Virus record (IMG/VR): IMGVR_UViG_3300042319_002138
Coordinates: 162,304-226,303 of that record
DNA length: 64,000 nucleotides
Strand: one strand, 5' to 3'
This document shows positions 26,365 to 45,714 of this stretch, piece after piece. The notes beneath the pieces were generated by a model that made no database searches, was not told the DNA's origin, and worked only from the letters and a program-made list of their open reading frames with translations. How positions within the stretch are numbered: the first letter of the stretch is position 1; every line of letters starts with the position of its first letter. The position numbers and the translations under genes were made by a program.

Positions 26365-26394
26365 TTGACAATTTAAAAACTTTTATTATCTTTG
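26365..26394 (+). promoter_or_regulatory. Bacteroidota-type promoter for leader 1 / tRNA cluster 1
   Basis: TTGACA at 26365 and -7 element TATCTTTG at 26387. Confidence 0.75.
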
Positions 26395-26423
26395 TAACAT
26401 ATTTAATTAATAAGAATAAAAAA

Positions 26424-26534
26424 ATGATAACAAATAACATACATATCAGCAATCGTAATCAGTGGTATCAGCCGTGTTTTATTAACAATGGTAAGGGTAT
26501 GTTATGTGTAAATGGAAGTGAGGAAATAATTTAA
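26424..26534 (+). CDS. Leader peptide 1 (36 aa, MITNNIHISNRNQWYQPCFINNGKGMLCVNGSEEII)
   Basis: Short ORF between promoter and terminator; codons mirror tRNA cluster 1. Confidence 0.8.
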   Translation: MITNNIHISNRNQWYQPCFINNGKGMLCVNGSEEII

Positions 26535-26560
26535 TCACAGAAGTAAATAAAAATATAACA

Positions 26561-26590
26561 AACCCAATTCCAAAAGAGTTGGGTTTTTTG
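26561..26590 (+). terminator. Attenuator terminator of tRNA cluster 1
   Basis: AACCCAATTC-caaaa-GAGTTGGGTT plus T-tract; competing pairing 26495-26505 with 26555-26565. Confidence 0.8.
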
Positions 26591-26604
26591 TTTATAAAAA
26601 AAAA

Positions 26605-26678
26605 CGATGTGTATATCAGTTGGTTAGATAGACACTCTGATAAGGTGTAGGTCGGAGGTTCGAGCCCTCCCACATCGA
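26605..26678 (+). tRNA. tRNA-Ile(GAU)
   Basis: Cloverleaf; anticodon loop CTGATAA. Confidence 0.93.
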
Positions 26679-26718
26679 CAAAAAAGAAAAAGTTCTTTGA
26701 TGTATTGGTATTAGTAAT

Positions 26719-26791
26719 GACTCAGTAGCTCAATTGGTAGAGCTCCACACTGTTAATGTGGCCGTTACAGGTTCAAGTCCTGTCTGAGTCG
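26719..26791 (+). tRNA. tRNA-Asn(GUU)
   Basis: Cloverleaf; loop CTGTTAA. Confidence 0.93.
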
Positions 26792-26794
26792 CTG

Positions 26795-26915
26795 AGGTTG
26801 ATTGGGGAATGATATAACGTTAACGTGTCAGTAGTCGTGGTTATATCGGAGTTGTAACTGTCCGAGTAAAGCCAATCGTAAAAGGGGATGTCCACACAAC
26901 CATCTTCCCCTTTCC
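26795..26915 (+). ncRNA. Candidate structured RNA between tRNA-Asn and tRNA-Tyr
   Basis: GATTGG/CCAATC, GATATAAC/GTTATATC and GGGGATG/CATCTTCC stems. Confidence 0.5.
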
Positions 26916-26921
26916 TAACTT

Positions 26922-27002
26922 GGGAACTGAAAGTCGTTTGGATACGGCAGCGAAACTGTAAATTTCGTCCTCGCGGGAGTGGTTCGAGTCCACCAGGTCC
27001 CA
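26922..27002 (+). tRNA. tRNA-Tyr(GUA), atypical D arm
   Basis: Loop CTGTAAA, T arm GGTTCGAGTCC, acceptor GGGAACT/AGGTCCC. Confidence 0.75.
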
Positions 27003-27070
27003 CAAAAAAAAATAAATGTAATATAAGTGGATTTTAACTCTGTTTGTTATATTTATAATAAAAGAATATT

Positions 27071-27520
27071 ATGAAACAGAGAGAAGTTAAAATTACTGAT
27101 GAAGAAATAAAGTTGGCATATGACAAATACGACACACTACATCAGGCATCCGCAGAATTAAAAATGACTACTGTGTCATTATGGAGAAGGGCAAAAAAAA
27201 TTGGTTTAGCCTGGAAAGATAAAAACTTTAAACCTGAACAACAAAAAATACCTTTAAACGAGATTATAGAAGGTAAACATCCGTACTACCAAACCTTAAA
27301 ATTAAAAAAAAGGTTATTGAAAGAAGGGGTTAAAGAAAATAAGTGTGATATTTGCGGTATAATAGATTGGAATAATATAGAGTTATCAATGCAATTAGAC
27401 CATATTGATGGTGACTCACACAACCACAAATTGGATAATTTAAGGATGGTTTGCCCTAACTGCCATTCACAAACAAACACTTATTGTGGTAAAAATAAAA
27501 AAATCAAAGCGGAAATTTGA
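27071..27520 (+). CDS. HNH homing endonuclease inside tRNA cluster 1
   Basis: 'KCDICG...QLDHIDGDSHNHKLDNLRMVCPNCH'. Confidence 0.9.
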   Translation: MKQREVKITDEEIKLAYDKYDTLHQASAELKMTTVSLWRRAKKIGLAWKDKNFKPEQQKIPLNEIIEGKHPYYQTLKLKKRLLKEGVKENKCDICGIIDWNNIELSMQLDHIDGDSHNHKLDNLRMVCPNCHSQTNTYCGKNKKIKAEI

Positions 27521-27550
27521 AAACAACATGTCTTCCTGTATATTTTATAC

Positions 27551-27622
27551 GCGTCTTTGGTGTAATTGGTAGCACGGCTGGTTCCAACCCAGTCGGTCAG
27601 GGTTCGAGGCCTTGGGGATGTG
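27551..27622 (+). tRNA. tRNA-Trp(CCA)
   Basis: Loop TTCCAAC; G-U-rich acceptor. Confidence 0.8.
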
Positions 27623-27627
27623 CAAAT

Positions 27628-27703
27628 GGTGATGTAGCTCAGTTGGTAGAGCAAAGGACTGAAAATCCTTGTGTCGAAGGTTCAATTCCTTCCATCACCA
27701 CCA
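27628..27703 (+). tRNA. tRNA-Phe(GAA)
   Basis: Loop CTGAAAA; encoded CCA. Confidence 0.95.
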
Positions 27704-27707
27704 TTAT

Positions 27708-27782
27708 AGGGTAATGGACTAATTGGCAAGTCACCACGTTTGGGACGTGGGCATCGTGAGAGTTCGAGTCTCTCTTACCCTA
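27708..27782 (+). tRNA. tRNA-Pro(UGG)
   Basis: Loop TTTGGGA. Confidence 0.9.
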
Positions 27783-27790
27783 CTATACAA

Positions 27791-27863
27791 TGTCCTATGG
27801 TGTAATTGGCAACACGTCGGTTTTTGGTACCGAAGAGTCGAGGTTCGAACCCTTGTGGGACAA
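27791..27863 (+). tRNA. tRNA-Gln(UUG)
   Basis: Loop TTTTGGT. Confidence 0.9.
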
Positions 27864-27869
27864 CAATAT

Positions 27870-27943
27870 GGTGTTTGAAGCATTAAGGTGATGTACTAGT
27901 TTGTGGGACTAGGAAAGACGGGTCGGTACCGTCCTTACACCCA
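27870..27943 (+). tRNA. tRNA-His(GUG), non-canonical T loop
   Basis: Loop TTGTGGG; G-1 extended acceptor; T loop GTCGGTA. Confidence 0.75.
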
Positions 27944-27947
27944 AAAA

Positions 27948-28037
27948 GGAAAGGTGGGTGAGTGGCTAAAACCAACAATCTGCTAAGTTGTCGTACCTGT
28001 AAGGGTACCGAGGGTTCGAATCCCTCCCTTTCCTCCA
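27948..28037 (+). tRNA. tRNA-Ser(GCU)
   Basis: Loop CTGCTAA, long variable arm, CCA. Confidence 0.93.
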
Positions 28038-28040
28038 TAT

Positions 28041-28112
28041 GTGGATGTGATGTAACGGTTAACATGAGACTCTTATACAGTCTTCTCGGTGGTTCAACTC
28101 CACCCATCCATA
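28041..28112 (+). tRNA. tRNA-Ile(UAU)
   Basis: Anticodon arm AGACT-CTTATAC-AGTCT. Confidence 0.8.
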
Positions 28113-28117
28113 CTATT

Positions 28118-28191
28118 ACACTCTTAGCTCAATGGATTAGAGCACAACGTTACGGACGTTGGGGTTGGTGGTTCGAGTCCATCAGAGTGTA
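28118..28191 (+). tRNA. tRNA-Arg(ACG)
   Basis: Loop TTACGGA. Confidence 0.9.
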
Positions 28192-28200
28192 CAATAATAA

Positions 28201-28271
28201 GGCACCATGCCCGAGTGGTTAGGGGTCGGTCTGCAAAACCGCTTACATTGGTTCGAACCCAATTGGTGCCT
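28201..28271 (+). tRNA. tRNA-Cys(GCA)
   Basis: Loop CTGCAAA. Confidence 0.92.
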
Positions 28272-28354
28272 CTATCTTTAATTTCTTTTATATTCAATAT
28301 AGGCCCAAACACCAACAAATATTGGGGTTAGTATAGCAATAACTATTTCTGTAT

Positions 28355-30562
28355 TCATCGCATAATTGTTAAATGTCCTGTTATCATTTTACGTGAGTCA
28401 TCATACTCAGACCCATACATTATTCTCCAAACATAAATCCCATCAAAACACATTTTATTATTATAAGTACCATCCCAACCAACGGTATGATTGTATGATT
28501 CAAAAATTGTTTCACCCCATCTATTGAATACCAATAAATTATAATCATAGACATCAAACCCATCAGTAAATATTGGTAACCAAATATTGTTGAAAGCATC
28601 ACCATCGGGGGTAAATGTATTAGGTATATAAATTAATTCTTGTGGACATTCTTGTATTGCTATATTAGCTTGTTCTTCATTAGAAACACAACCATTAACC
28701 GTTTGGGAAACGCTAATTGTATAAAAACCAACATTATTCCAAACATAAGGTAAACTATTATCTTGTATTGTATCACCTTCAACAACCCAATCAAACAACC
28801 CAGATAAAGATGAATAAGCTGTATAGATTCTAAAAATACTATCACCTTCACAAAGTTGGTTAAATTCATATGAAGGTGTTACAGATGTTATGATTGGTTG
28901 TGGGTTTACAATAACGTTGATTGTTGTATCAAATGGGCAATTACTTTGTGTATATGTATAAGTTACATCATTGTTTGTTATGATACCTTGTTGTGGGCAA
29001 AATTCATCAGTCTGAACCCCATTGACTAAGAAAGTACCATTTAAAGGTGAACCCACTAAATCTACACAACCATCATAATCACAAAAAGGACCAATAGGGT
29101 CTATTGTAGGGTTTATGTTTAAAATAAATGTAGTGAAGTAAGAGGTATCACTATTACAACCAATAGGACTAGTAGAATAAACACTTATAGAGTCTTGATA
29201 TAAACCACTAGGTTCTAATGACCAATCCGTTGTTATATTATCAGTACCTTGACCATTTATTATTTGTGGTGTTGTAGACCATATGTAGTTGTAACCAACA
29301 CCCATAGAAGGTACACTATAACTTTCTGATGTTGATAAATAACATACCGTATCAGGACCACTAATAGGTGTCATTATTATTTGTGCTGGGTTAGTGAGTG
29401 TTGCATTACCTGTTACGGTACAACCTATACCGTCTGTAATTAAAAAACTATAATTACCATAACAAAGGTTAGTGGGGTTAAAAGTTGTTTGTAGAGTATT
29501 CCAAGAAATAGTAGTGACACCATTGGTTCCGTTAGGGATTACATTAATACTACCATCACAATAGTTATAACAAGTTGGGTCAATAAAAGTAATTGTAGGT
29601 TGTGGTAAGTTAGGTGGACCAGGTTGTACAAACACCGTATCAGGTCCTGGACCGGCAATACTATTACAAGTATTCCATCCAACATTACAAGAAGGATATA
29701 CTAGTTGACAAGTATAATTAGCTCCTTGTACAGGTGGTGTAACCGTAATGGACGCACCAACCCCAATTGGATTTGGGTTACCTACAATATACCATGTTGG
29801 TACAGGTAAAACAGTTGGTCCACTTGGAGTGTATCGGTACGCATCATTATTTGCTGTCCATTGTGTGGAATTCCTACCTGGTACAGTTATCGCCACGGTT
29901 CCTGTGGTATTATGTAATCCTTGAACCGCGGTACCTCCCGCCCAAGCTAGACAGTTTGGTTTTGATTGAATATAATTTTCTATTACGTTTGTTGATTCAT
30001 AAATCACTGTATGAAATGTCCCCAGTAAATTTGTACATGAAAACATAGGGACACCAACCCAACTAACAACTAATTTTCTACAAGGTGCTGTACCTTGAAC
30101 TTGGTACCTAATTTGCCCACCTAAACCTGGGTGCCAATCTTGCCAAGGACCCATGACACAATTTTTTGGTACTGTACCCGCACCATTAGGTATTGTTGCT
30201 GAAGTAAATGTTGTTGGTTGTGCCGGTGAAAAAGAAATCCAACCGTTAGAACCAACCCAAAATTGATTGTATGTTTGTCCAAAGAAACAAAATGTAAACC
30301 CAATATTAAAAGGACCTTGTTGTGAATCATCCGACATAAATAATTGTGTACCAGTATTTGTTTGTGTTACATAAGGAATATTTGTAACACCGTAGTTTGT
30401 TGTTTGATTTGGATTTGAACCTGGTCCACATTGACTAAAATCGGCAGTTAATGTTGTTGACCCAACACCACAAGGTAGTATTTGGTCTGGTCCTAAATAA
30501 GGACAGTATTGTGAATAGGTCACAAAAGAAATTAGTATAAAAAGGTATTTAATTAAGTTCAT
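28355..30562 (-). CDS. Secreted adhesin-like protein with T9SS type B (gliding motility-associated, CHU_C) C-terminal domain
   Basis: Signal peptide ending YSQ; C-terminal 'YIPNTFTPDGDAFN...VFNRWGE...GWDGTYN...GIYVW'. Confidence 0.88.
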   Translation of the reverse strand: MNLIKYLFILISFVTYSQYCPYLGPDQILPCGVGSTTLTADFSQCGPGSNPNQTTNYGVTNIPYVTQTNTGTQLFMSDDSQQGPFNIGFTFCFFGQTYNQFWVGSNGWISFSPAQPTTFTSATIPNGAGTVPKNCVMGPWQDWHPGLGGQIRYQVQGTAPCRKLVVSWVGVPMFSCTNLLGTFHTVIYESTNVIENYIQSKPNCLAWAGGTAVQGLHNTTGTVAITVPGRNSTQWTANNDAYRYTPSGPTVLPVPTWYIVGNPNPIGVGASITVTPPVQGANYTCQLVYPSCNVGWNTCNSIAGPGPDTVFVQPGPPNLPQPTITFIDPTCYNYCDGSINVIPNGTNGVTTISWNTLQTTFNPTNLCYGNYSFLITDGIGCTVTGNATLTNPAQIIMTPISGPDTVCYLSTSESYSVPSMGVGYNYIWSTTPQIINGQGTDNITTDWSLEPSGLYQDSISVYSTSPIGCNSDTSYFTTFILNINPTIDPIGPFCDYDGCVDLVGSPLNGTFLVNGVQTDEFCPQQGIITNNDVTYTYTQSNCPFDTTINVIVNPQPIITSVTPSYEFNQLCEGDSIFRIYTAYSSLSGLFDWVVEGDTIQDNSLPYVWNNVGFYTISVSQTVNGCVSNEEQANIAIQECPQELIYIPNTFTPDGDAFNNIWLPIFTDGFDVYDYNLLVFNRWGETIFESYNHTVGWDGTYNNKMCFDGIYVWRIMYGSEYDDSRKMITGHLTIMR

Positions 30563-31455: not shown

Positions 31456-31479
31456 TAACTCCAATTAATACTTATTGAT

Positions 31480-33405
31480 ATGGATAAAAATTTTTACATT
31501 AATAAATTAAATAAAACTTTAATTTCACAAACACATAACCCTCTTTTTTATAAAGGGGATATAGTAGAAGGTTCTAAAATTCTAACTAAAGAAGTTGTAG
31601 ACTCAATTAATGTTGATAGATGTTCTATATGGTTATACAACAAAAATAAAACATCTATTGTTTGCCAACAATTATATGTTAAATCTGAAAATATGTGGTA
31701 TGATGGTTTAGAAATCTTTGAAAAGGATTTTGGACCGTATTTCGAAGAATTAATAAAGAACCCAATAATAATAGCTAATGATGCTGAAAAACATCCAGCA
31801 ACATCTTGTTTTACTGATGGTTATTTAAAACCACTGGGTATTAAATCTATGTTAGATGTACCTATCATTTATTTTGGGGAAACTATTGGTGTTATATGTA
31901 TTGAAAGTTTTACATTACGTGAATGGGATTCTTTTGAGGTTGATTTTACTCAATTATTATCTTCTTTATACACTTTTGCTTATTCAATAAAAGAAACAAA
32001 CAATTTAAATAAAAAAATAGAAGAAACAGAAAAATTTATTGACGTATCGACAATTATATCTACTGCTGATAAAAGAGGTAAAATTACATATGTTAATAAA
32101 AAATTTGAGGATGTTTCTGGGTGGTCTTTGGATGAGGTAGTTGGTAAAGACCATGTTATTGTTAATTCGGGATTACAACCTGATGGATATTGGGGTAAAA
32201 TGTATGAAACGGTAATGAAAGGTGATGTATGGAATGACGTTGTTACCAATAAAGGAAAATCAGGAGAATTATATTACGTTGATACTTTTATTAGAGCAAT
32301 TTTTGATACCGATGGTAAATTGGATGGATTTGCTTCAATAAGACAAGATGTTACAGAACTTAAAAAAAAGGAAGTTGAAATTCGCAATAGAATGAACGCG
32401 ATAAATAAATCTAACGCAGTTATTGAGTTTGATTTAGAAGGAAACATCATTTTTGCTAATAATTTGTTTTTAGAAACTATGGGATATTCTTTACAGGATG
32501 AAGTAGTTGGAAAACACCATAGAATTTTTATAGATGAGGAATACTCAAAAAGTGAAGAATACTCTCTTTTTTGGGAAAAATTAAATGAAGGGGTGTTATT
32601 TACCGGTGAAATTACTAGAATTAAAAAAGACGGTTCTTTAGTGTATCTACAAGCAACATACAATCCAGTTATCGGTTTAGATGGTAAGGTTTATCGTGTT
32701 ATGAAAATCGCGACAGATATCACCAATTCCTACGAACAAAAGAAAGAAATTGAAAAGAAAAACACTTACCTAGAACATGCGGCTAAAATATTAAGACACG
32801 ATATGCATTCAGGTATTAATACTTATATGCCAAGAGGATTAAGTTCTTTAGAAAGAAGATTAACCCCCGAAGATATTAAAACTTTAAAAATTGAGGCCCC
32901 AATTAAAATGATTAAAGAGGGTTTAAAACATTCCCAAAAAGTATATAAAGGGGTTTACGAATTTACAAATCTTGTAAAGAAAGATGTTGTTTTAAATAAA
33001 ACGGAATGTAATTTAAAAGATATACTTGAGGATTATTTATCAGCGACAGCATATAGTAGTCAAGTTATTATTGATGAGTTACCAACGATAGAAGTTAATG
33101 AACCATTATTCTGTACCGCAGTCGATAATTTAATTCGTAATGGGTTAAAGTATAATGATAGTAATACAAAATTTGTTAAAATATATATGGAAGATGGTAA
33201 TCTAATTATACAAGACAACGGTAGAGGGATTACACAAAAAGATTTTATTCATTTATCCCAACCATATACCAGAAAAGAAGGCCAAAAAGAATCTGGAACT
33301 GGTCTAGGGCTTAATATATGTGTAGCTATTTTAGAAGAACATAAATTTAATATTTCGTGTGAGAAAAATGACATAGGGACAAAAATGAAAATTGAACTAA
33401 AATGA
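31480..33405 (+). CDS. Cytoplasmic sensor histidine kinase (GAF-PAS-PAS-HisKA-HATPase)
   Basis: GAF 'MLDVPII..GVICIE'; two PAS/PAC; H box 'RHDMHSG'; N box 'DNLIRNGLKY'; 'DNGRG'; 'GTGLGL'. Confidence 0.93.
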   Translation: MDKNFYINKLNKTLISQTHNPLFYKGDIVEGSKILTKEVVDSINVDRCSIWLYNKNKTSIVCQQLYVKSENMWYDGLEIFEKDFGPYFEELIKNPIIIANDAEKHPATSCFTDGYLKPLGIKSMLDVPIIYFGETIGVICIESFTLREWDSFEVDFTQLLSSLYTFAYSIKETNNLNKKIEETEKFIDVSTIISTADKRGKITYVNKKFEDVSGWSLDEVVGKDHVIVNSGLQPDGYWGKMYETVMKGDVWNDVVTNKGKSGELYYVDTFIRAIFDTDGKLDGFASIRQDVTELKKKEVEIRNRMNAINKSNAVIEFDLEGNIIFANNLFLETMGYSLQDEVVGKHHRIFIDEEYSKSEEYSLFWEKLNEGVLFTGEITRIKKDGSLVYLQATYNPVIGLDGKVYRVMKIATDITNSYEQKKEIEKKNTYLEHAAKILRHDMHSGINTYMPRGLSSLERRLTPEDIKTLKIEAPIKMIKEGLKHSQKVYKGVYEFTNLVKKDVVLNKTECNLKDILEDYLSATAYSSQVIIDELPTIEVNEPLFCTAVDNLIRNGLKYNDSNTKFVKIYMEDGNLIIQDNGRGITQKDFIHLSQPYTRKEGQKESGTGLGLNICVAILEEHKFNISCEKNDIGTKMKIELK

Positions 33406-34016
33406 TAAAACTAAAAAATTTATTAACCATATTTTTCATAAGTATGGTAAGTATAGTGTATTCACAACCAACCTACCCTATCCAGACACAATTAAAAGGT
33501 GATTCTGTGGTTATTCTTACAAAAAAACAATCTGATGATATTAATTCACTAATTGAGAATCAAAAAATTAGAATACAAAAATATAAAACAGAAATAAAAT
33601 TAGTTAATGATACTAACACGTTATTAAATAACGATATTAAAATAAAAGATAGTGTTATTAACCAATTGGATAGTTTGTTAACCGTCCAAAACAATTATTA
33701 CGATAGTTTAATTTCTAAAATAGATACGTTAGAGAATTGGATTTTATCGTCGTCGATAGATAATGGGTACCTATATTATTCTTGGCAAGACTCAACAGTT
33801 AAAGTTATTGATTTAAGTTTGTATATGTTAGTATCGCATAGAGGAAGTGGTAATTATAGTTTAATTACAAGAGGTGATGTTACTAATATATATTATTGGA
33901 AACAAATAAATCTACTTAAAGAAGAAAGTCCTGAGATTGGTTGGGAATTAAATATATCCCCAAAATATAAACCAAGAATAGTATTATTCCCATATAAATT
34001 AACCCCAAAATTATGA
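33402..34016 (+). CDS. Secreted coiled-coil protein in two-component locus
   Basis: Signal peptide ending YSQ. Confidence 0.6.
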   Translation: MIKLKNLLTIFFISMVSIVYSQPTYPIQTQLKGDSVVILTKKQSDDINSLIENQKIRIQKYKTEIKLVNDTNTLLNNDIKIKDSVINQLDSLLTVQNNYYDSLISKIDTLENWILSSSIDNGYLYYSWQDSTVKVIDLSLYMLVSHRGSGNYSLITRGDVTNIYYWKQINLLKEESPEIGWELNISPKYKPRIVLFPYKLTPKL

Positions 34017-35416
34017 TAAAAAATATTTTAATAACAATAATGTTTTTGGGTTTTTTTACTTCTTTAAATGTAAATTCACAGACTGATAATAACCCCAAAA
34101 AAACAGAGATTGAACCTACATGTCCTAGTGATAGTCGTATAACTAGTTTAATTAAAAAATTAAATTACGAACCAAATAAAAAATTAACTAAATACCAATC
34201 AAGCTTATGTCAAGAAATTGGTATCTCTTTTTATAATAAAGGTATGTATGATGAGTCAGATTGGTATTTAGATAAGGTTAGTACCTATATTGATGTTGTT
34301 GATTTAAAACCTGAAAAAGTTTTTGACACACCTAAAGAAGAACCCGTACAAGAGTTAAGTGACTCAGAATTATCTAGTATTAAAGCCGACCAAAAATTTT
34401 TAGATGACCTACCAAAATCATACGATAATTTATCTAAAAAAGATATAAAAAAAATTGCTGATGAGATAGAGTCAAAACTCCAAAAACTATTAAAAGAAAA
34501 AAAAGAATTATTAAAAAATAAAGCTAGTCAAGAAGTTATCAGTTCTAAAACAAGTACTATACAAATATTAGGTAAAGAAAAAAATATCATTAATCTTAGT
34601 GTTAAAAATGATGATTTAGTTACCGATAAAAAAACCTTAAAAAAATATTTATGGTGGTCCACAATTGTTCTTTCTGTTTTGGTTTTAGGTATTATTGTTT
34701 TATTACAAAGAAAAACAATTAAAGTCCAAGACATAGAAATCGAAAACCAATTAAAAGACATTAACAAGAAAAACACTTACCTTGAATATGCGGCTAGAAT
34801 AATTAGACACGACATGCATTCAGGTATTAACACCTATATACCAAGAGGGTTATCGTCATTAGAAAAAAGAATTTCAATTGAGGAAATGAATAACTTAAAA
34901 ATTACACCCTCAATTAAAATGATAAAAGATGGTTTGGCACACACACAAAAAGTATATAAAAGTGTTTATGAGTTTACAAACCTTGTGAAAAATACTGTAG
35001 TTTTAGATAGAAATATGGTTGATATAAAAGAATCTTTATTAAAATACTTAACAAATACATCATATAAAAATCAGGTAGAAATTAGTGAATTAGTTACACT
35101 AAATGTAAATGAAACTCTTTTTTGGAACGCTATTGATAATTTAATTAAAAATGGGTTAAAATATAATAGTAGTGAAAATAAAGAAATTAAAATTTACATG
35201 GATAATAATGATTTAATTATTGAAGATAATGGTGTTGGATTTTCACAAAAAGAGTTCGAAAGAACAACAGGTGAATATTTAAATAAAAAGAGTAATTCCG
35301 AAGTTGGTTTAGGTTTAGGTATAACCAAAACAATTTTAGAAGAACATGGTTTTAGTATGATGTGTGAAAAAATTAACACTGGTACAAAAATAACGGTTAA
35401 ATTAAATAAAAATTAA
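34013..35416 (+). CDS. Membrane sensor histidine kinase
   Basis: Signal peptide, periplasmic domain, one TM, H box 'RHDMHSG', 'DNLIKNGLKY', 'DNGVG', 'GLGLG'. Confidence 0.9.
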   Translation: MIKNILITIMFLGFFTSLNVNSQTDNNPKKTEIEPTCPSDSRITSLIKKLNYEPNKKLTKYQSSLCQEIGISFYNKGMYDESDWYLDKVSTYIDVVDLKPEKVFDTPKEEPVQELSDSELSSIKADQKFLDDLPKSYDNLSKKDIKKIADEIESKLQKLLKEKKELLKNKASQEVISSKTSTIQILGKEKNIINLSVKNDDLVTDKKTLKKYLWWSTIVLSVLVLGIIVLLQRKTIKVQDIEIENQLKDINKKNTYLEYAARIIRHDMHSGINTYIPRGLSSLEKRISIEEMNNLKITPSIKMIKDGLAHTQKVYKSVYEFTNLVKNTVVLDRNMVDIKESLLKYLTNTSYKNQVEISELVTLNVNETLFWNAIDNLIKNGLKYNSSENKEIKIYMDNNDLIIEDNGVGFSQKEFERTTGEYLNKKSNSEVGLGLGITKTILEEHGFSMMCEKINTGTKITVKLNKN

Positions 35417-36541: not shown

Positions 36542-36572
36542 TTTGACAATTAATAAACTTTTACTATATTTG
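36542..36572 (+). promoter_or_regulatory. Bacteroidota-type promoter for leader 2 / tRNA cluster 2
   Basis: TTTGACA and TATATTTG; flanking sequence closely resembles the leader-1 promoter. Confidence 0.75.
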
Positions 36573-36614: not shown

Positions 36615-36716
36615 ATGAAAACAACAATGACATACAAACAAGGGACCGTTAAAACGGTTGATGGGAAAGTGGATTCACTTTTCTACGGACATGGGTTGTC
36701 ATACTGGAGTTGTTGA
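36615..36716 (+). CDS. Leader peptide 2 (33 aa, MKTTMTYKQGTVKTVDGKVDSLFYGHGLSYWSC)
   Basis: Short ORF between promoter and terminator; codons mirror tRNA cluster 2. Confidence 0.8.
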   Translation: MKTTMTYKQGTVKTVDGKVDSLFYGHGLSYWSC

Positions 36717-36741
36717 TTTGAATTTACTCTATATATAGAAT

Positions 36742-36773
36742 AACCCTGGGTCCAAAAGATTCAGGGTTTTTTG
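36742..36773 (+). terminator. Attenuator terminator of tRNA cluster 2
   Basis: AACCCTGGGTC-caaaa-GATTCAGGGTT plus T-tract. Confidence 0.8.
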
Positions 36774-36799
36774 TTCTTTGATATATCGGTTTAAAAAAA

Positions 36800-36889
36800 G
36801 GAAGGGTGGCAGAGTTGGTCTATTGCATCTGATTTGAAATCAGAAGTACCTTTGAAAGGGTACCGTGGGTTCGAATCCTACCTCTTCCT
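36800..36889 (+). tRNA. tRNA-Ser(UGA)
   Basis: Loop TTTGAAA, long variable arm. Confidence 0.93.
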
Positions 36890-36896
36890 CATAAAT

Positions 36897-36968
36897 GGTC
36901 CATTGGTGTAGTGGCCAACATACATCCCTGTCACGGATGTGCCGCGAGTTCGATTCTCGCATGGACCG
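36897..36968 (+). tRNA. tRNA-Asp(GUC)
   Basis: Loop CTGTCAC. Confidence 0.92.
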
Positions 36969-37009
36969 CAACTAACCATAAATCCTAGTAACCCCTAGGT
37001 TGGTTAAAC

Positions 37010-37082
37010 AGTTCCTTAGCTCAGCTGGGAGAGCAACTCGCTTACATCGAGAAGGTCACAGGTTCGAACCCTGTAGGAACTA
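37010..37082 (+). tRNA. tRNA-Val(UAC)
   Basis: Loop CTTACAT. Confidence 0.92.
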
Positions 37083-37091
37083 CAATAAATT

Positions 37092-37166
37092 GCCTCATTA
37101 GCTCAGCTGGCTTAGAGCGTCTGATTTGTACTCAGAAGGCCGTGGGTTCGATTCCTACATGAGGCT
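37092..37166 (+). tRNA. tRNA-Thr(UGU)
   Basis: Loop TTTGTAC. Confidence 0.92.
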
Positions 37167-37228
37167 CAATTAATAACAAACAAATAAAAACGTCAGATTA
37201 TGGAAAGTGGCAAGTATGGCAAACACAA

Positions 37229-37300
37229 TCCCTCGTAGCAAACAAGTGTAGGCAACGGACTTTTAATCCGTGGGGCTGGGAGCGTTACCCGGCGGGGGAA
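37229..37300 (+). tRNA. tRNA-Lys(UUU), non-canonical T loop
   Basis: ACGGA-CTTTTAA-TCCGT; T arm CTGGG-AGCGTTA-CCCGG; 7-bp acceptor. Confidence 0.75.
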
Positions 37301-37308
37301 CAAAACAC

Positions 37309-37378
37309 ACCGAGGCTTAGTGGTAAAGAACTATCTCTCATAAGGATGGTCAAGTGGGTTCAATTCCCATACTCGGTA
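37309..37378 (+). tRNA. tRNA with CAU anticodon (Met or Ile2), short D arm
   Basis: Loop CTCATAA; T arm GTGGG-TTCAATT-CCCAT. Confidence 0.7.
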
Positions 37379-37386
37379 CATTATAT

Positions 37387-37457
37387 TGCGGCAAGGTGTA
37401 ATTGGTTGCATGGGAGTCTCATAAACTTCAGGGGTGGTTCGAGTCCACAGCACGCTA
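37387..37457 (+). tRNA. tRNA with CAU anticodon, imperfect acceptor stem
   Basis: GGAGT-CTCATAA-ACTTC; bulged acceptor. Confidence 0.6.
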
Positions 37458-37462
37458 CTAAT

Positions 37463-37537
37463 GGGGATATAGTTTAATTGGCTAAAACATCTGATTTGCA
37501 TTCAGAAGATGTCTCGGTTCGATTCCGAGTATCTCCA
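37463..37537 (+). tRNA. tRNA-Ala(UGC)
   Basis: Loop TTTGCAT; G3-U70. Confidence 0.92.
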
Positions 37538-37570
37538 CAATAAAATAACAAAAGAAAAAGAAAGAAATTA

Positions 37571-37690
37571 ATGAAGATAGTGTTAACAGGTAAATTAGAA
37601 TCACATAGAGAAATTTTTAGAGGAGAAAGAGAAAAAAATAAATTGATTAAAAGAATAAAAAAATTTATTTTTAAAAGAAAAAACGCTTAA
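37571..37690 (+). CDS. Small basic ORF inside tRNA cluster 2 (39 aa)
   Basis: ATG 37571 to TAA 37690; not in the ORF track. Confidence 0.35.
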   Translation: MKIVLTGKLESHREIFRGEREKNKLIKRIKKFIFKRKNA

Positions 37691-37734
37691 TAGAACAAAG
37701 TACAAGTTCAGGGTGGGGTGCGGTTCCCACAAAT

Positions 37735-37811
37735 GCGGGTGTAGCTCAATTGACTAGAGTACTAGCCTTCCAAGCTGGGAGTTGCGGGTTTGAATCCCGC
37801 CACCCGCTCCA
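37735..37811 (+). tRNA. tRNA-Gly(UCC)
   Basis: Loop CTTCCAA; CCA. Confidence 0.92.
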
Positions 37812-37812
37812 T

Positions 37813-37895
37813 ACGTCAGTGGCGGAATTGGTAGACGCGTTGGTTTTAGGAACCAATATCGTTAAGATGTGGGGGTTCGACTCCCCCCTGACGTA
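37813..37895 (+). tRNA. tRNA-Leu(UAG)
   Basis: Loop TTTAGGA, long variable arm. Confidence 0.93.
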
Positions 37896-37938
37896 CTTTT
37901 ATTTTGCCAATTAAACAATAACCCTTATATTTGTAATT

Positions 37939-40200: not shown

Positions 40201-40201
40201 T

Positions 40202-42666: not shown

Positions 42667-42684
42667 ATTTATTATATTTGTGTT

Positions 42685-42924
42685 ATGGAAAAAAGAAGCA
42701 CACATTACGGAGACGTATCAAAATGGATTGAAAAGGTAATTGATTCTTGCGAGACATACCAACAGACATTTACTGTTAAAAAATTGATTAGTAATTTTGC
42801 AAAACAATTAAGAAATAGTGCCCCTGATAAATATTGGAACAGTTATCAATACACAGTTATTTGGCCACTTGAACATAAATTAAAATATAAAAGACAATCA
42901 TTCATAGATAAGATTGGGGAATAA
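42685..42924 (+). CDS. Hypothetical protein
   Basis: TATATTTG promoter upstream. Confidence 0.6.
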   Translation: MEKRSTHYGDVSKWIEKVIDSCETYQQTFTVKKLISNFAKQLRNSAPDKYWNSYQYTVIWPLEHKLKYKRQSFIDKIGE

Positions 42925-43082
42925 TGGGGAATAATGAAATTGAACTAGAAAAAAATTATCTACCCGAATTTATTGACCAATTTGGTGATGGTCCTCTCGG
43001 TGAATTAGACCCTGAAGAATGGGGAGCATTAGAGTTTCTCAGATGGTTAGAAATTAATAATTATAAAATTATAAAAAAATAA
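42924..43082 (+). CDS. Small hypothetical protein (52 aa)
   Basis: ATG overlaps upstream stop; not in the ORF track. Confidence 0.5.
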   Translation: MGNNEIELEKNYLPEFIDQFGDGPLGELDPEEWGALEFLRWLEINNYKIIKK

Positions 43083-43089
43083 TAAATTT

Positions 43090-43236
43090 ATGGAAAATAT
43101 GAAAAGAGTTGATTGGTTTTTGTTAATAATATTTGTAGCAAACTTATGTGCTAGCATTCCATTAGGGTCTTTACCAAACATTCTTGGTTGGTCTTGTGCG
43201 GCAATGGTACAATTAAGAATTTGTTTAACCAAATAA
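43090..43236 (+). CDS. Small membrane protein (48 aa)
   Basis: MENMKRVDWFLLIIFVANLC...; not in the ORF track. Confidence 0.45.
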   Translation: MENMKRVDWFLLIIFVANLCASIPLGSLPNILGWSCAAMVQLRICLTK

Positions 43237-43306
43237 TATAAAAGGTAATAATTGTTAATTACAAAATTTGACTTTTTAAGAAATACAACTATATTTATAA
43301 TATAAA

Positions 43307-43375
43307 ATGAAAAATACGAACATCATATCATTATTAGAAAGATTAGAGAGATTTAGTCTAATGGAGATGGTATGA
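43307..43375 (+). CDS. Leader peptide 3 (22 aa, MKNTNIISLLERLERFSLMEMV)
   Basis: Core codons TTA TTA GAA AGA TTA GAG AGA match downstream Leu(UAA), Glu(UUC) and Arg(UCU). Confidence 0.78.
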   Translation: MKNTNIISLLERLERFSLMEMV

Positions 43376-43396
43376 TTATTTTTTAAATAATATTTT

Positions 43397-43432
43397 AAAA
43401 CCCGTCTCTTAAAACAGATGGGTTTTTTTTTT
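43397..43432 (+). terminator. Attenuator terminator of tRNA cluster 3
   Basis: AAAACCCGTCT-cttaaaac-AGATGGGTTTT plus T-tract. Confidence 0.8.
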
Positions 43433-43486
43433 GAAAAAGATTTGGTAGATTAAAAAAGATTACTTACATTTGTAAGACAAACAACG

Positions 43487-43915
43487 GGGGTAGGAAGTTA
43501 GAGATGAGTGTCCTACTCCCGTGACAAAAAGAAAAAGTTCTTTGACATATTAAAACGGGGACAAGGTAACCACAAACCCACTGGTAATAGGCAGTTCTTG
43601 AGATGGAATGCAAGACAGAACGTAACCCCTACCTTGTTCTTTTTTAAAATATATTGTGGTGGTAAGAAAAGGTGAACTCGTTAAGTTCATAGGCCTGTTG
43701 ACAAAAGATGGTGAAACGAGTGTGGTTGTCGACTACTGCATCACATATATAATACATTGTGTTGTTCCCTTGAGAAAGGAATCAAGAATAAGAGTGGACA
43801 GACTTTAAGCACTACAACACAGAGGACTCAACCTCAAAGAACCTGTACCCTTGAAAAACTCGTTTAAGTAAAGCAGGTTTGCTCCGAAATAAAAGGGTAT
43901 GAGAATAAGGAGTAT
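43487..43915 (+). ncRNA. Tandem array of candidate structured small RNAs
   Basis: Consecutive closed stems: GGGGGTAGGA/TCCTACTCCC, ACAAGGTA/TACCTTGT, TGTGGTG/CATCACA, TGTGTTGT/ACAACACA, and a pseudoknot-like AACCTG/CAGGTT with TACCCTT/AAGGGTA. Confidence 0.55.
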
Positions 43916-43917
43916 TT

Positions 43918-44000
43918 GCTCGGGTGGTGAAATAGGTATACACGTTTGACTTAAAATCAAATTCCCATTGGGAGTGAGGGTTCAAGTCCCTCTCCGAGTA
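43918..44000 (+). tRNA. tRNA-Leu(UAA)
   Basis: TTTGA-CTTAAAA-TCAAA, long variable arm. Confidence 0.92.
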
Positions 44001-44061
44001 CTGTGAAATGAACAACGTCACCACAAGAGTTGTACCTTTATGGTTTTATAATGTGGTATTT

Positions 44062-44133
44062 GGTCCTATCGACTATCGGTTAGGTCGTCAGGTTTTCATC
44101 CTGGAAAGCGGGGTTCGATTCCCCGTAGGACTA
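44062..44133 (+). tRNA. tRNA-Glu(UUC)
   Basis: Loop TTTTCAT. Confidence 0.92.
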
Positions 44134-44216
44134 CAAAAGAGGTGGATACTTTGTACGTAGATAATTTAGTAATATCTTGTCGTAGTGCACCGTTGACGAA
44201 ACCTCTTTTATTTTTG

Positions 44217-44289
44217 GGTCCCGTAGTGTAATGGATTAACATAAGGAGCTTCTACCTCTTTGATTCAGGTTCGAATCCTGACGGGACTA
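44217..44289 (+). tRNA. tRNA-Arg(UCU)
   Basis: Loop CTTCTAC. Confidence 0.9.
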
Positions 44290-44356
44290 CTAAAAAAATA
44301 TTAACTACTAGGTTCGATTTTTAATAAACCTTAAATATTTATTAATAAAATATATT

Positions 44357-44962
44357 ATGAATTTTGAGGAAAAATATAATAAAGAAGAACTTGAGAAGTT
44401 AATTTTTGTTGAGAGTAAGAGTTATCGTGAAATTGGTAAAATTTATGGTGTTAGTGACGCATACATAAAAAAAGTGTGTGGCAGATTAGGGATTAAACTT
44501 AGAAAAAGAAAAAATTTTCCTGAAAATTTTATACCACACAATAAAGGTATGGGTAAAAAAGTTATATGTAAAAATTGTGGTAAAGAAACAAAAAGTTCAC
44601 ACGATAAACAAATATATTGTTCATTTGATTGTAATGTGGAACATAAAAATAAAAATAAATACAAAGATTACTTAGACAATCAAGAAAAATATTGTAATAC
44701 CACATCAGGTTTGCGATGGTTAAAAAAATATTTTTTAATAGACCAAGATAATAAGTGTAATATTTGTGGAATAGATAATTTTTGGAACGGTAAACCATTA
44801 GTTTTTGTTATGGACCATATAAACGGTGATGCTAGTAATAACAAAAGAGATAATCTAAGATTAATATGTCATAATTGTGATTCACAGTTAGACACATACA
44901 AATCTAAAAATAAGAATTCAGCAAGGAAAGAAAGATATTTGTTAAACTACAAAAATATTTAA
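44357..44962 (+). CDS. HNH homing endonuclease inside tRNA cluster 3
   Basis: 'KCNICG...VMDHINGDASNNKRDNLRLICHNCD'; N-terminal CxxC module. Confidence 0.9.
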   Translation: MNFEEKYNKEELEKLIFVESKSYREIGKIYGVSDAYIKKVCGRLGIKLRKRKNFPENFIPHNKGMGKKVICKNCGKETKSSHDKQIYCSFDCNVEHKNKNKYKDYLDNQEKYCNTTSGLRWLKKYFLIDQDNKCNICGIDNFWNGKPLVFVMDHINGDASNNKRDNLRLICHNCDSQLDTYKSKNKNSARKERYLLNYKNI

Positions 44963-45177
44963 AATAAACGAGAAAGAGATACTCGTAGGGTTTTTAAGTA
45001 TCCCTCAAAACTTAACGGAGCTGGTACCACCACGTCAAGGGGTACTCGTTGGGAATCGGAAGGAAGACTCTCCTATCCCCCAAGTAAGAGTTGACTTTTA
45101 AGTGGTAAGACACGTTGGGTTTTGAAATAGAAAAACTGTGAATATCTACTCACCATTAATCTCAGGTGGGGAAACAT

Positions 45178-45283
45178 AGTCAGGTGGCGGAATTGGTTAG
45201 ACGCTAAATTAACGAGTGGATAGTGTGCCATTGGGGAAGGGCCAAGAAAGTTACACATACAGGTTCAAGTCCTGTCCTGACTA
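45178..45283 (+). ncRNA. tRNA-like RNA (Leu-type D arm, T arm, acceptor AGTCAGG/CCTGACT) lacking a canonical anticodon arm
   Basis: TGGCGGAATTGGTTAGACGC ... ACAGGTTCAAGTCCTGT; the middle does not form a 5-bp stem with 7-nt loop. Confidence 0.7.
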
Positions 45284-45300
45284 CAAAAAAATAAAAAATT

Positions 45301-45549
45301 ATGGAAAATAAAGAAACATACCAAATGGTGAATTATGATGGTGATAGTTACGACAGTAAGATCCCTGTGGAATTAGTTGAGTCGTTCCTTAAAATGAAAG
45401 AACTAATGGAACAGGTGTCTAATGGGAAATATTATTGTACACCAAGTATGTATTATACAGATGAATTGGAAGGTGTTTCAGTAGGTATAGTTGAGGTTAA
45501 TGGTGACGGGACACATATTAAAACACCATTTAGTTTAATTATCAAATAA
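45301..45549 (+). CDS. Hypothetical protein
   Basis: ORF between the two tRNA-like RNAs. Confidence 0.55.
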   Translation: MENKETYQMVNYDGDSYDSKIPVELVESFLKMKELMEQVSNGKYYCTPSMYYTDELEGVSVGIVEVNGDGTHIKTPFSLIIK

Positions 45550-45554
45550 AAAAT

Positions 45555-45635
45555 AGTCAGGTGGCGAAATGGTGACGCCTAAATGAGACCCGTGGGGCGA
45601 AAAGACTCTCGTAGGTTCAAATCCTGTCCTGACTA
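45555..45635 (+). ncRNA. Second tRNA-like RNA with identical acceptor AGTCAGG/CCTGACT and no anticodon arm
   Basis: TGGCGAAATGGTGACGC ... GTAGGTTCAAATCCTGT. Confidence 0.7.
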
Positions 45636-45640
45636 ATTTA

Positions 45641-45714
45641 GGTCCTTTAGCTCAGTCGGTTAGAGCAACAGACTCATAATCTGTGGGTCCACGGTTCGAG
45701 CCCGTGAAGGACCA
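45641..45714 (+). tRNA. tRNA(CAU), probably Ile2 (lysidine type)
   Basis: ACAGA-CTCATAA-TCTGT; body resembles bacterial Ile2. Confidence 0.8.

What the first reader, a model, noticed from the sequence alone, without database searches (positions are those of the whole stretch)
26365..45714. Three codon-matched leader-peptide attenuators, each controlling its own phage tRNA operon
Seen in sequence: each of the three main tRNA clusters has the same layout upstream, namely promoter, 22-36 codon ORF, a segment able to pair with the 5' arm of a terminator, an intrinsic terminator, then the tRNAs. The leader codons mirror their own cluster. In leader 1, 20 of the first 22 residues are amino acids of cluster 1 (Ile, Asn, His, Ser, Arg, Gln, Trp, Tyr, Pro, Cys, Phe), and all 11 are present. 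In leader 2, 20 of the first 22 residues belong to cluster 2 (Met, Lys, Thr, Gly, Val, Asp, Ser, Leu); it has no Ile or Asn despite the AT-rich genome. Leader 3 has TTA TTA GAA AGA TTA GAG AGA ahead of Leu(UAA), Glu(UUC) and Arg(UCU). The match reaches the isoacceptor: Ser is AGC in leader 1 (Ser-GCU) but TCA in leader 2 (Ser-UGA); Arg is CGT in leader 1 (Arg-ACG) but AGA in leader 3 (Arg-UCU); Leu is CTT in leader 2 (Leu-UAG) but TTA in leader 3 (Leu-UAA). Established knowledge: trp/his/ilv-type attenuation couples ribosome stalling at hungry codons to read-through. Inference: the phage senses shortage of specific charged host tRNAs (starvation, or cleavage by anticodon nucleases of the PrrC/colicin/PARIS type) and induces only the operon that resupplies them. 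I do not know of this being described for phage tRNA arrays.
Basis: partly seen in the sequence, partly recalled or inferred. Interest (0 to 1): 0.97.

Follow-up and report, generated by a model that had tools for sequence, protein, structure and literature searches.

The report
Codon-matched attenuators ahead of phage tRNA operons
Two tRNA gene clusters of an uncultivated Bacteroidota phage each sit behind a short reading frame, spelled in the codons those tRNAs read, and a terminator, which looks like a trp-style attenuator that makes more tRNA when decoding is slow; I found no earlier description of this for tRNA genes.

Summary
Each of the first two clusters has a strong Bacteroidota-type promoter, a 36- or 33-codon ORF and an intrinsic terminator. 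The first tRNA follows 13-25 nt after the terminator, which leaves no room for another promoter.

The leader codons match their own cluster far beyond chance. In a permutation test no shuffle out of 200,000 reached the observed match. Leader 1 is the only stretch in the 64 kb, in any of six frames, that covers all 11 tRNA species of cluster 1.

Nine related lineages from viral and metagenome contigs keep both modules:
- The ORFs stay open and all indels are multiples of three.
- The terminator stems show compensatory changes.
- A tail segment that pairs with the terminator's 5' arm is conserved as RNA, in one lineage in a different reading frame.
- Glu codons occur in leader 2 only where tRNA-Glu sits in cluster 2.

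Folding with a masked ribosome puts the antiterminator ON/OFF boundary exactly where the matched codons end, in all 15 modules.

Leader 3 has textbook trp-like structure but exists only in this phage. A conserved promoter lies between its terminator and the tRNAs. Sensing of anticodon nucleases remains speculation, and nothing here has been tested experimentally.

The parts
26365..26394 (+). Promoter 1: TTGACA, then a 16-nt spacer, then TATCTTTG (Bacteroidota -7 type box)
   Evidence: About 88% identical to promoter 2 over 48 nt. Conserved in all relatives.
26424..26534 (+). Leader ORF 1 (36 codons). Codons 2-22 (26427-26489) are the cluster-1-matched control codons.
   Evidence: The ORF is open in 7 variants, all indels are multiples of three, and the other two frames hold 2-8 stops.
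26434..26442 (+). Segment 1 of leader 1 (AUAACAUAC), a possible partner of segment 2
   Evidence: Duplex energy -13 to -18 kcal/mol; P against shuffles is 0.01-0.07 in most variants and 0.32 in one.
26495..26507 (+). Segment 2 of leader 1 (GGGUAUGUUAUGU), the 5' strand of the antiterminator
   Evidence: Invariant as RNA in all lineages. In lineages F and G it is read in a different frame.
26553..26565 (+). Segment 3 of leader 1 (AUAUAACAAACCC): the 5' flank and base of the terminator's 5' arm, which pairs with segment 2
   Evidence: Duplex -15 to -20 kcal/mol, z -2.9 to -4.2.
26560..26592 (+). Intrinsic terminator 1 (stem 26560-26586 plus U tract)
   Evidence: Stem pair 4 occurs as AU, GC, UA and CG among the lineages.
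26605..28272 (+). tRNA cluster 1: Ile-GAU, Asn, Tyr, an HNH-like ORF, Trp, Phe, Pro, Gln, a degenerate His homologue at 27865-27947, Ser-GCU, Ile-UAU, Arg-ACG, Cys
36543..36572 (+). Promoter 2: TTGACA, then a 16-nt spacer, then TATATTTG
36615..36716 (+). Leader ORF 2 (33 codons). Codons 2-22 (36618-36680) are the cluster-2-matched control codons.
36687..36697 (+). Segment 2 of leader 2 (GGACAUGGGUU), which pairs with the terminator's 5' arm
   Evidence: It changes together with the terminator arm in lineages G, F and H.
36742..36774 (+). Intrinsic terminator 2 (stem 36742-36768 plus U tract)
36772..36789 (+). boxA-like motif between terminator 2 and the first tRNA
   Evidence: The same motif lies 5' of tRNA-Asn, inside the cluster-3 leader RNA and 5' of the tmRNA.
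36800..37896 (+). tRNA cluster 2: Ser-UGA, Asp, Val, Thr, Lys, two weak CAU tRNA-like sequences, Ala, Gly-UCC, Leu-UAG
43268..43297 (+). Promoter-like site ahead of leader 3
43307..43375 (+). Leader ORF 3 (22 codons). Codons 9-15 are Leu-Leu-Glu-Arg-Leu-Glu-Arg. The ORF lies inside a long hairpin, and GGAGAUGG at 43363-43370 can pair with the terminator's 5' arm.
43397..43433 (+). Intrinsic terminator 3
43441..43472 (+). Second promoter (TTTG ... TACATTTG), conserved in every lineage that has cluster 3
43473..43917 (+). Conserved structured 5' RNA of the cluster-3 operon; function unknown
   Evidence: no Rfam match.
43918..44290 (+). tRNA cluster 3: Leu-UAA, Glu-UUC, Arg-UCU

Best explanation
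Clusters 1 and 2 are each controlled by a ribosome-mediated (leader-peptide) transcription attenuator.

Proposed mechanism. A strong promoter starts a transcript whose first roughly 110 nt encode a short peptide. Codons 2 to about 22 sample nearly every tRNA species encoded in the operon behind. The ORF tail holds an RNA segment (segment 2) that pairs with the 5' arm of an intrinsic terminator placed 23-31 nt after the stop codon.
- If the ribosome is slowed at any control codon, because the matching charged tRNA is scarce, segment 2 stays free. It pairs with the terminator arm as that arm emerges, and RNA polymerase reads into the tRNA genes.
- If decoding is fast, the ribosome covers segment 2, the terminator forms and transcription stops.
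The result is negative feedback from decoding capacity to tRNA supply, operon by operon.

Shown here: the anatomy, the codon match, conservation and covariation, and the coincidence of the structural boundary with the end of the matched codons.
Inferred: translation of the leaders, the sign of the response, and its physiological trigger.

Leader 3 may be a lineage-specific third attenuator of the classical three-hairpin type. It would add regulated read-through on top of a constitutive promoter. I put this at about 0.4.
For: 1. Layout. The terminator ends 13-25 nt before the first tRNA, so there is no room for a promoter.
2. Codon match. See the statistics. All amino acids of the cluster are covered in 8 of the 9 modules with an intact or nearly intact cluster.
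3. Boundary. In all 15 modules the predicted antiterminator probability is 0.5-0.9 while the ribosomal A site is at or before codon 17-22. It collapses after that, exactly where the matched codons stop.
4. ORF conservation. The ORFs are open in 7 plus 8 variants, all indels are multiples of three, and the other frames hold 2-8 stops.
5. Head versus tail. The head of the ORF evolves within the cluster's amino-acid set, while the tail is conserved as RNA. GGGUAUGUUAU is read as KGML in most lineages and as GYVM in F and G.
6. Terminator covariation, and pairing of segments 2 and 3 stronger than shuffles and changing with the arm.
7. Spacing. The stop-to-terminator distance is 23-31 nt in every module. 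That is the range where a ribosome at the stop codon no longer blocks a terminator in E. coli (PMC4824070).
8. Glu. Glu codons occur in leader 2 only in lineages H, I, G and F, whose cluster 2 contains tRNA-Glu.
9. Codon choice. G-ending codons read by U34 wobble make up 7 of 17 control codons, against 16% in phage genes (P = 0.014).
Against: - There is no experimental evidence. The host, the transcription start sites and transcription-translation coupling are all unknown.
- Lineages C and D deleted most tRNAs of clusters 1 and 2, with remnants still visible, yet kept their leaders unchanged.
- Some conserved control codons are unmatched: ACA in leader 1, TAC and CAA in leader 2, and AGA and TTR in leader 2 of lineages H, G and F.
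- The window's own leader 2 lacks Ala, and its segment 2:3 duplex is weak (z = -0.7).
- Pairing of segments 1 and 2 is weak for leader 1 and not significant for leader 2. Without a ribosome the model predicts read-through for leaders 1 and 2.
- At equilibrium the terminator always wins, so the decision must be kinetic.
- The Glu association may rest on only one or two evolutionary events.
Confidence: 0.7

Rival explanations
1. The terminators are simply leaky insulators, or the ends of small independent genes. On this view the short ORFs encode micro-peptides or are not translated, the tRNAs are made by constitutive read-through, and the codon match has no sensing role.
For: - Read-through at equilibrium cannot be predicted.
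- Lineages C and D keep their leaders although most tRNAs behind them are gone.
- The N-terminal MKTT and MKTTMTYK sequences are conserved.
Against: - The codon match and complete tRNA coverage are far beyond chance and recur across lineages.
- Peptide sequence is not conserved in the head, apart from its composition. The tail is conserved in a different reading frame.
- The structural boundary coincides with the end of the matched codons in 15 of 15 modules.
Confidence: 0.1
2. The sign is the opposite, a coupling-type attenuator as in pyrBI. A ribosome following the polymerase closely suppresses the terminator, so good decoding gives more tRNA and stalling gives termination.
For: The stop-to-terminator distance of 23-31 nt lies near the threshold of about 27-30 nt below which a ribosome at the stop codon represses a terminator in E. 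coli.
Against: - The ORF never overlaps the terminator.
- A conserved segment 2 complementary to the terminator arm would then be unexplained.
- Positive feedback on tRNA supply has no obvious logic.
- The matched codons end just before segment 2, as the trp-type model predicts.
Confidence: 0.08
3. The leader RNAs act at the RNA level, without translation. They might bind tRNA directly, as a T-box does, or work as trans-acting small RNAs released at the terminator.
For: - Codons 3-20 of leader 1 are identical at the nucleotide level, except for AGC/AGT, in five lineages whose flanks differ.
- Small RNAs derived from attenuators are known, for example rnTrpL (PMC6614838, listed).
Against: - No T-box or other Rfam family matches.
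- Indels in multiples of three and frame-specific absence of stops point to translation.
- In lineages F and G the same region changes by synonymous codons read by the same tRNA: CAT to CAC, TGT to TGC.
- A trans-acting role could exist alongside attenuation.
Confidence: 0.07
4. This rival concerns leader 3 only. It is an independent small RNA or small gene, a promoter plus hairpin plus terminator, that happens to lie upstream of cluster 3. Cluster 3 is expressed from its own promoter.
For: - Leader 3 occurs only in this phage.
- At least six other genomic contexts run from the end of a protein-coding gene directly into the conserved promoter.
- The Leu-Glu-Arg run is a tandem 9-nt duplication inside a hairpin with z = -4.15, so fewer codons are independent.
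- The match P is only 0.003-0.02.
Against: - Masked-ribosome folding gives a clean three-state switch. The antiterminator probability is 0.02 with no ribosome, 0.80 with the A site at codons 2-15, and 0.36 falling to 0 from codon 16 to the stop. The boundary falls exactly at the last matched codon.
- The order Leu, Glu, Arg equals the gene order.
Confidence: 0.55

Closest known systems
Leader-peptide transcription attenuators of amino-acid operons (trp, his, leu, pheA; multivalent thr and ilvGMEDA/ilvBN)
   Same: All have a promoter, a short ORF rich in regulatory codons, mutually exclusive antiterminator and terminator hairpins, and a decision set by ribosome position. The thr and ilv leaders already sense two or three amino acids. 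Leader 3 has the full 1:2 / 2:3 / 3:4 hairpin scheme.
   Different: - The regulated genes here are tRNAs, not biosynthetic enzymes, so the product feeds back directly on the signal.
- The leaders sample 8-12 different amino acids, mostly once or twice each, instead of carrying runs of one codon.
- Isoacceptor-specific codons are used.
- The 1:2 hairpin is weak or absent in leaders 1 and 2.
- The setting is a phage genome in a Bacteroidota context.
Attenuators and T-box leaders of aminoacyl-tRNA synthetase genes (pheST leader peptide; T-box riboswitches)
   Same: They regulate a component of the decoding apparatus in response to the charging state of tRNA, through a terminator/antiterminator choice.
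   Different: T-boxes bind uncharged tRNA directly and have a conserved specifier loop and T-box sequence. No such match was found here. The target here is a tRNA array, not a synthetase gene.
Bacteroid-trp leader motif (a predicted leader-peptide attenuator in Bacteroidota; recalled from memory of Rfam and Weinberg et al. 2010, not checked here)
   Same: It indicates that leader-peptide attenuation is plausible in hosts that lack Shine-Dalgarno-led initiation.
   Different: It has Trp codons only, regulates trp genes, and belongs to a cellular genome.
Phage tRNA arrays as codon compensation or as a counter to tRNA-targeting defences (PMC10264068, PMC11464382; listed)
   Same: Both concern phage-encoded tRNAs that replace scarce or cleaved host tRNAs.
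   Different: Judging from their titles and abstracts, those papers concern what the tRNAs do, not demand-dependent regulation. Seven full-text searches found no report of leader-peptide control of tRNA genes.

Membership tests
Ribosome-mediated (leader-peptide) transcription attenuator | A short translatable ORF between the promoter and the first regulated gene | tested here: met
   The ORFs have 36, 33 and 22 codons with A-rich start contexts. They are open in all 15 related modules, all indels are multiples of three, and the other frames are full of stops. Translation itself has not been shown.
Ribosome-mediated (leader-peptide) transcription attenuator | The ORF is enriched in codons whose decoding reports the regulated pathway | tested here: met
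   The own-cluster match and coverage are significant against several null models. The off-diagonal leader/cluster combinations are depleted.
Ribosome-mediated (leader-peptide) transcription attenuator | An intrinsic terminator between the ORF and the regulated genes | tested here: met
   Stems of 10-11 bp with a U tract. Compensatory changes across lineages. The first tRNA follows 13-25 nt later for clusters 1 and 2.
Ribosome-mediated (leader-peptide) transcription attenuator | An antiterminator whose 5' strand is masked by a ribosome that has passed the control codons | tested here: met
   The boundary appears in all 15 modules and in leader 3. The duplex is significant for leader 1 (z -2.9 to -4.2). 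It is moderate for leader 2 (z -0.7 to -2.7), where it changes together with the terminator arm in lineages G, F and H.
Ribosome-mediated (leader-peptide) transcription attenuator | An anti-antiterminator (1:2) hairpin that gives termination when the leader is not translated | tested here: inconclusive
   Leader 3: strong (z = -4.15; antiterminator probability 0.02 without a ribosome). Leader 1: marginal (P 0.01-0.07 in most variants, 0.32 in one). Leader 2: not significant.
Ribosome-mediated (leader-peptide) transcription attenuator | Read-through responds to the supply of charged tRNA | not testable with these tools
   Needs reporter assays, Term-seq or Ribo-seq.
T-box riboswitch | Specifier loop, conserved T-box sequence, stem I architecture | tested here: not met
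   No T-box hit, either at the Rfam gathering threshold or at E up to 1, over the leaders.
Curated Rfam leader families (Thr_leader and others) | A score at or above the family's gathering threshold | tested here: not met
   The only hit is Thr_leader at 36669-36775 with 22.8 bits, against a threshold of 55 (E = 0.16).
pyrBI-type coupling attenuator | The leader ORF runs into or through the terminator hairpin | tested here: not met
   The stop codon lies 23-31 nt upstream of the stem in all modules.

The most novel reading that the evidence does not exclude
A group of phages of marine and other aquatic Bacteroidota runs its tRNA operons as demand-driven homeostats. Each operon is preceded by a 'sampler' peptide that contains at least one codon for nearly every tRNA it encodes. 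Slow decoding of any of these codons, whether from codon-usage mismatch, starvation or cleavage of host tRNAs by defence nucleases, switches on resupply of exactly that set. This would be the first case of tRNA genes under ribosome-mediated attenuation, and a natural sensor of tRNA depletion.
Probability: 0.55. Interest if true: 0.9.

Novelty: new variant of a known kind. Interest (0 to 1): 0.85.

Why it matters
- Why phages carry tRNAs, and when they use them, has been debated for decades. A leader that spells out the operon's own decoding set shows which shortages the phage monitors, and so makes the question testable with simple reporter fusions.
- It extends leader-peptide attenuation from biosynthetic genes to the decoding machinery itself. 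The result is a closed feedback loop from ribosome speed to tRNA supply.
- It stretches multivalent sensing from two or three amino acids to as many as twelve.
- It offers a compact natural part for building circuits that respond to tRNA levels.
- If tRNA-cleaving defence systems trigger it, it would be an inducible counter-defence.

Tried and rejected
- GenBank phages. blastn of both clusters and of both leaders alone found no relative, only tRNA and HNH matches and a weak AT-rich hit in Lak phages.
- First IMG/VR pattern scan. It returned only copies of the same phage, 100% identical, so it gave no comparative information.
- Genome collection scan. It gave two chance promoter matches upstream of ordinary genes. 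One metagenome hit, L037, was likewise unrelated.
- Plain match counts as a statistic for leader 1. AT-rich antisense ORFs also score high on the AT-rich cluster-1 codon set, so I relied on tRNA-species coverage, pooled-codon permutation and six-frame windows instead.
- MAFFT alignments A1 and A2. They put the terminator arms of some lineages out of register, so pairs were counted from per-sequence folds rather than with the count of structure pairs.
- Pairing of segments 1 and 2 in leader 2. It is not better than shuffles.
- My first reading of leader 3 as having no antiterminator. Ribosome masking overturned it.
- A literature check of the boxA idea by sequence string. It gave only irrelevant hits.
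- Seven literature searches for prior descriptions found none.

Full report
CONTEXT
The window has about 30% G+C and carries 24 ARAGORN-called tRNAs plus a tmRNA. Several features mark it as a phage of Bacteroidota:
- It is 100% identical over the leaders to several IMG/VR viral contigs of up to 226 kb.
- It has PHROG matches, a Mom-family protein and HNH-like ORFs inside the tRNA arrays.
- It encodes a protein with a type IX secretion CHU_C domain.
- Its promoters are of the TTG ... TAnnTTTG type. That consensus is from my memory of the Bacteroidota literature.
No GenBank phage is related at the DNA level.

THE OBSERVATION
Leader 1 is at 26424-26534, leader 2 at 36615-36716 and leader 3 at 43307-43375.
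- For clusters 1 and 2 the U tract ends 13 and 25 nt before the first tRNA. Transcription of these tRNAs must therefore pass through the terminator.
- The promoters and 5' UTRs of modules 1 and 2 are about 88% identical over 48 nt, while the ORFs are unrelated. The two modules are paralogues whose ORFs have diverged.
- Cluster 3 is different. After the leader-3 terminator comes a second promoter (43441-43472) and about 450 nt of G+C-richer RNA before tRNA-Leu.
It is the positional homologue of a properly called tRNA-His(GUG) in relatives, but has an aberrant T loop.

IS THE CODON MATCH CHANCE?
Under strict wobble rules the own-cluster matches are 24 of 35 codons for leader 1, 17 of 32 for leader 2 and 8 of 21 for leader 3. 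All off-diagonal leader/cluster combinations are depleted.
- After correcting for choice of prefix length, P is about 5e-6, 1-4e-4 and 6e-3 against phage codon usage. Among roughly 12,000 real gene windows the counts reaching the observed value were 0, 0-1 and 234.
- Among 381 mechanical small ORFs in six frames, the three leaders rank 2nd, 1st to 3rd, and 4th for their own cluster. This null also shows that simple counts are inflated for the AT-rich cluster-1 codon set.
- Two composition-robust tests are therefore more telling. Redistributing the pooled 88 codons among the three leaders never reached the observed diagonal of 49 (mean 27.5; 0 of 200,000). Coverage of all 11 tRNA species of cluster 1 within 18 codons occurs only inside leader 1, among 44,603 stop-free windows.

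RELATIVES
A pattern taken from the shared promoter and UTR, which is independent of the ORFs, recovered every module in IMG/VR and in JGI and TARA metagenomes. A neighbouring protein recovered some of the same lineages independently. Besides the window phage there are eight lineages, B to I. Every true hit has the same order: promoter, ORF, terminator, tRNA or tRNA remnants. The modules are absent from 185,579 species genomes.

WHAT THE RELATIVES SHOW
1. The ORFs are maintained. There are no in-frame stops, against 2-8 stops in the other frames, and all indels are multiples of three.
2. The head of the ORF evolves within the amino-acid set of its cluster. The leader-2 variants differ at many positions, yet 15-19 of about 20 control residues stay in the set. 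All cluster amino acids are covered in 8 of the 9 modules with an intact or nearly intact cluster. The exception is the window's leader 2, which lacks Ala.
   - Leader 1 of lineages F and G differs by synonymous codons read by the same tRNA (CAT to CAC, TGT to TGC) and still covers 11 of 11.
3. The tail is constrained as RNA. GGGUAUGUUAU is invariant, but in F and G it is read in another frame.
4. The terminator stems show compensatory changes. Leader-1 stem pair 4 occurs as AU, GC, UA and CG.
5. Segment 2 is complementary to the terminator's 5' arm and its flank.
   - Leader 1: -15 to -20 kcal/mol, z -2.9 to -4.2.
   - Leader 2: -11 to -16 kcal/mol, z -0.7 to -2.7.
   - In lineages G and F, segment 2, the 5' arm and the 3' arm of leader 2 have changed together. 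In lineage H a G-to-A change in segment 2 matches a C-to-U change in the arm.
6. The stop-to-stem distance is 23-31 nt in all modules. In E. coli a ribosome at a stop codon stops interfering with a terminator beyond about 27-30 nt (PMC4824070).
7. Glu. Leader 2 has two Glu codons in lineages H, I, G and F, whose cluster 2 holds tRNA-Glu between Val and Thr. It has none in the window phage or in lineages E and C, which lack tRNA-Glu there.
   - E and I are the closest pair of leaders. They differ at six control codons, and two of the differences are GGG against GAG.

MECHANISM
I masked a 30-nt ribosome footprint at each A-site position and folded the RNA available just before the terminator's 3' arm is made.
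- In all 15 modules the probability that the 5' arm is already paired upstream is 0.5-0.9 while the A site is at or before codon 17-22. It collapses beyond that point.
- This boundary was derived from structure alone, and it coincides with the end of the matched codons. That explains why the match stops at about codon 22.
- At equilibrium the terminator always wins, so the choice must be kinetic, as in classical attenuators.
- Without any ribosome, leaders 1 and 2 are predicted to read through. Their 1:2 pairing is marginal or absent. They therefore look like switches in which termination needs rapid translation of the tail.
- G-ending codons that need U34 wobble are enriched in the control regions, which fits selection for sensitive codons.

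LEADER 3
It occurs only in the window phage. In at least six other genomic contexts a protein-coding gene ends directly at the conserved second promoter, so cluster 3 does not depend on leader 3.

Its structure is nevertheless textbook:
- The ORF lies in a hairpin with z = -4.15.
- The antiterminator probability is 0.02 with no ribosome, 0.80 with the A site at codons 2-15, and 0.36 falling to 0 from codon 16 to the stop.
- The boundary falls exactly at the last codon of the Leu-Leu-Glu-Arg-Leu-Glu-Arg run.
- The Leu-Glu-Arg unit is a 9-nt tandem duplication, so its statistical weight is modest.
I rate it as a possible accessory attenuator, with probability about 0.4.

WHAT ARGUES AGAINST
- Lineages C and D have deleted most tRNAs of clusters 1 and 2, leaving visible remnants, yet retain their leaders essentially unchanged. 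The leader does not track content quickly, or it has a further function.
- Codons 3-20 of leader 1 are identical at the nucleotide level, except for AGC/AGT, in five lineages. That is more than codon identity alone requires.
- Some conserved control codons are unmatched.
- None of this has been tested experimentally.

COMPARISON AND NOVELTY
The parts list is that of trp, his, thr and ilv-type attenuation. Rfam finds no curated leader family or T-box. Three things are new:
- the target: tRNA genes, so the product feeds back on the signal;
- the breadth: 8-12 amino acids sampled once or twice each, with isoacceptor-specific codons;
- the phage setting.
Seven full-text searches found no earlier description, and I recall none. 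I therefore class it as a new variant of a known kind. The link to anticodon nucleases is an attractive but untested idea.

Noticed in passing
window 26691-26708, 36772-36789, 43536-43553, 57980-57997 (all + strand): An 18-nt motif, AGTTCTTTGAYRTATTGG, has four copies against 0.4 expected. Every copy lies just 5' of a stable-RNA gene: tRNA-Asn, tRNA-Ser, the cluster-3 leader RNA and the tmRNA. At the tmRNA it sits between the promoter's -7 box and the RNA's 5' end, so it is transcribed. It follows the leader-2 terminator in nearly every relative. From memory it resembles the boxA NusB/NusE antitermination site of rRNA operons; this is untested.
   Followed up: partly
window 43473-43917: About 450 nt of G+C-richer, apparently structured RNA lies between a conserved promoter and tRNA-Leu(UAA). 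It is conserved, with insertions, in lineages C and D and in several other viral contigs. It has no Rfam match.
   Followed up: partly
window 26793-26921; L027 4940-5075: A 129-nt spacer between tRNA-Asn and tRNA-Tyr is conserved in a relative that has lost tRNA-Asn. Its function is unknown.
   Followed up: no
L020 5000-5100; L027 4900-5200; L030 (minus strand), downstream of leader 2: Lineages C and D carry deletion remnants and hybrid tRNA fragments where the window phage has whole tRNAs, so tRNA arrays are being eroded in these phages. A 228-aa endonuclease-like ORF sits in the gap in L027.
   Followed up: partly
window 27071-27520 and 44357-44962: HNH-type homing-endonuclease-like ORFs are inserted within tRNA clusters 1 and 3.
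   Followed up: no
window 45178-45283, 45555-45635, 49805-49913; ORF 18574-20016: Three tRNA-like sequences with insertions score only 34-35 bits with the Rfam tRNA model, and there are weak YrlA (Y RNA-like) hits nearby. A 480-aa protein matches phrog_850 'RNA-binding protein' (E = 4.5e-149) and the domains DUF2828 and DUF7788. This may be an RNA-protein system related to tRNA handling.
   Followed up: no
window 57996-58388: A phage-encoded tmRNA (99 bits) with tag peptide ANATVGHFVTEGATVAA.
   Followed up: no
window 31480-33405, 34013-35416, 28355-30562 (-), 21515-22309, 15349-16281: Unusual cargo for a phage: a GAF-PAS-PAS histidine kinase, a second HATPase protein, a PKD/CHU_C type IX-secretion protein, a Mom-family protein and a full DnaJ.
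   Followed up: no
window 36669-36775: A sub-threshold Rfam hit to Thr_leader (22.8 bits against a threshold of 55, E = 0.16) lies over the tail and terminator of leader 2. It probably reflects a generic leader-terminator shape.
   Followed up: no
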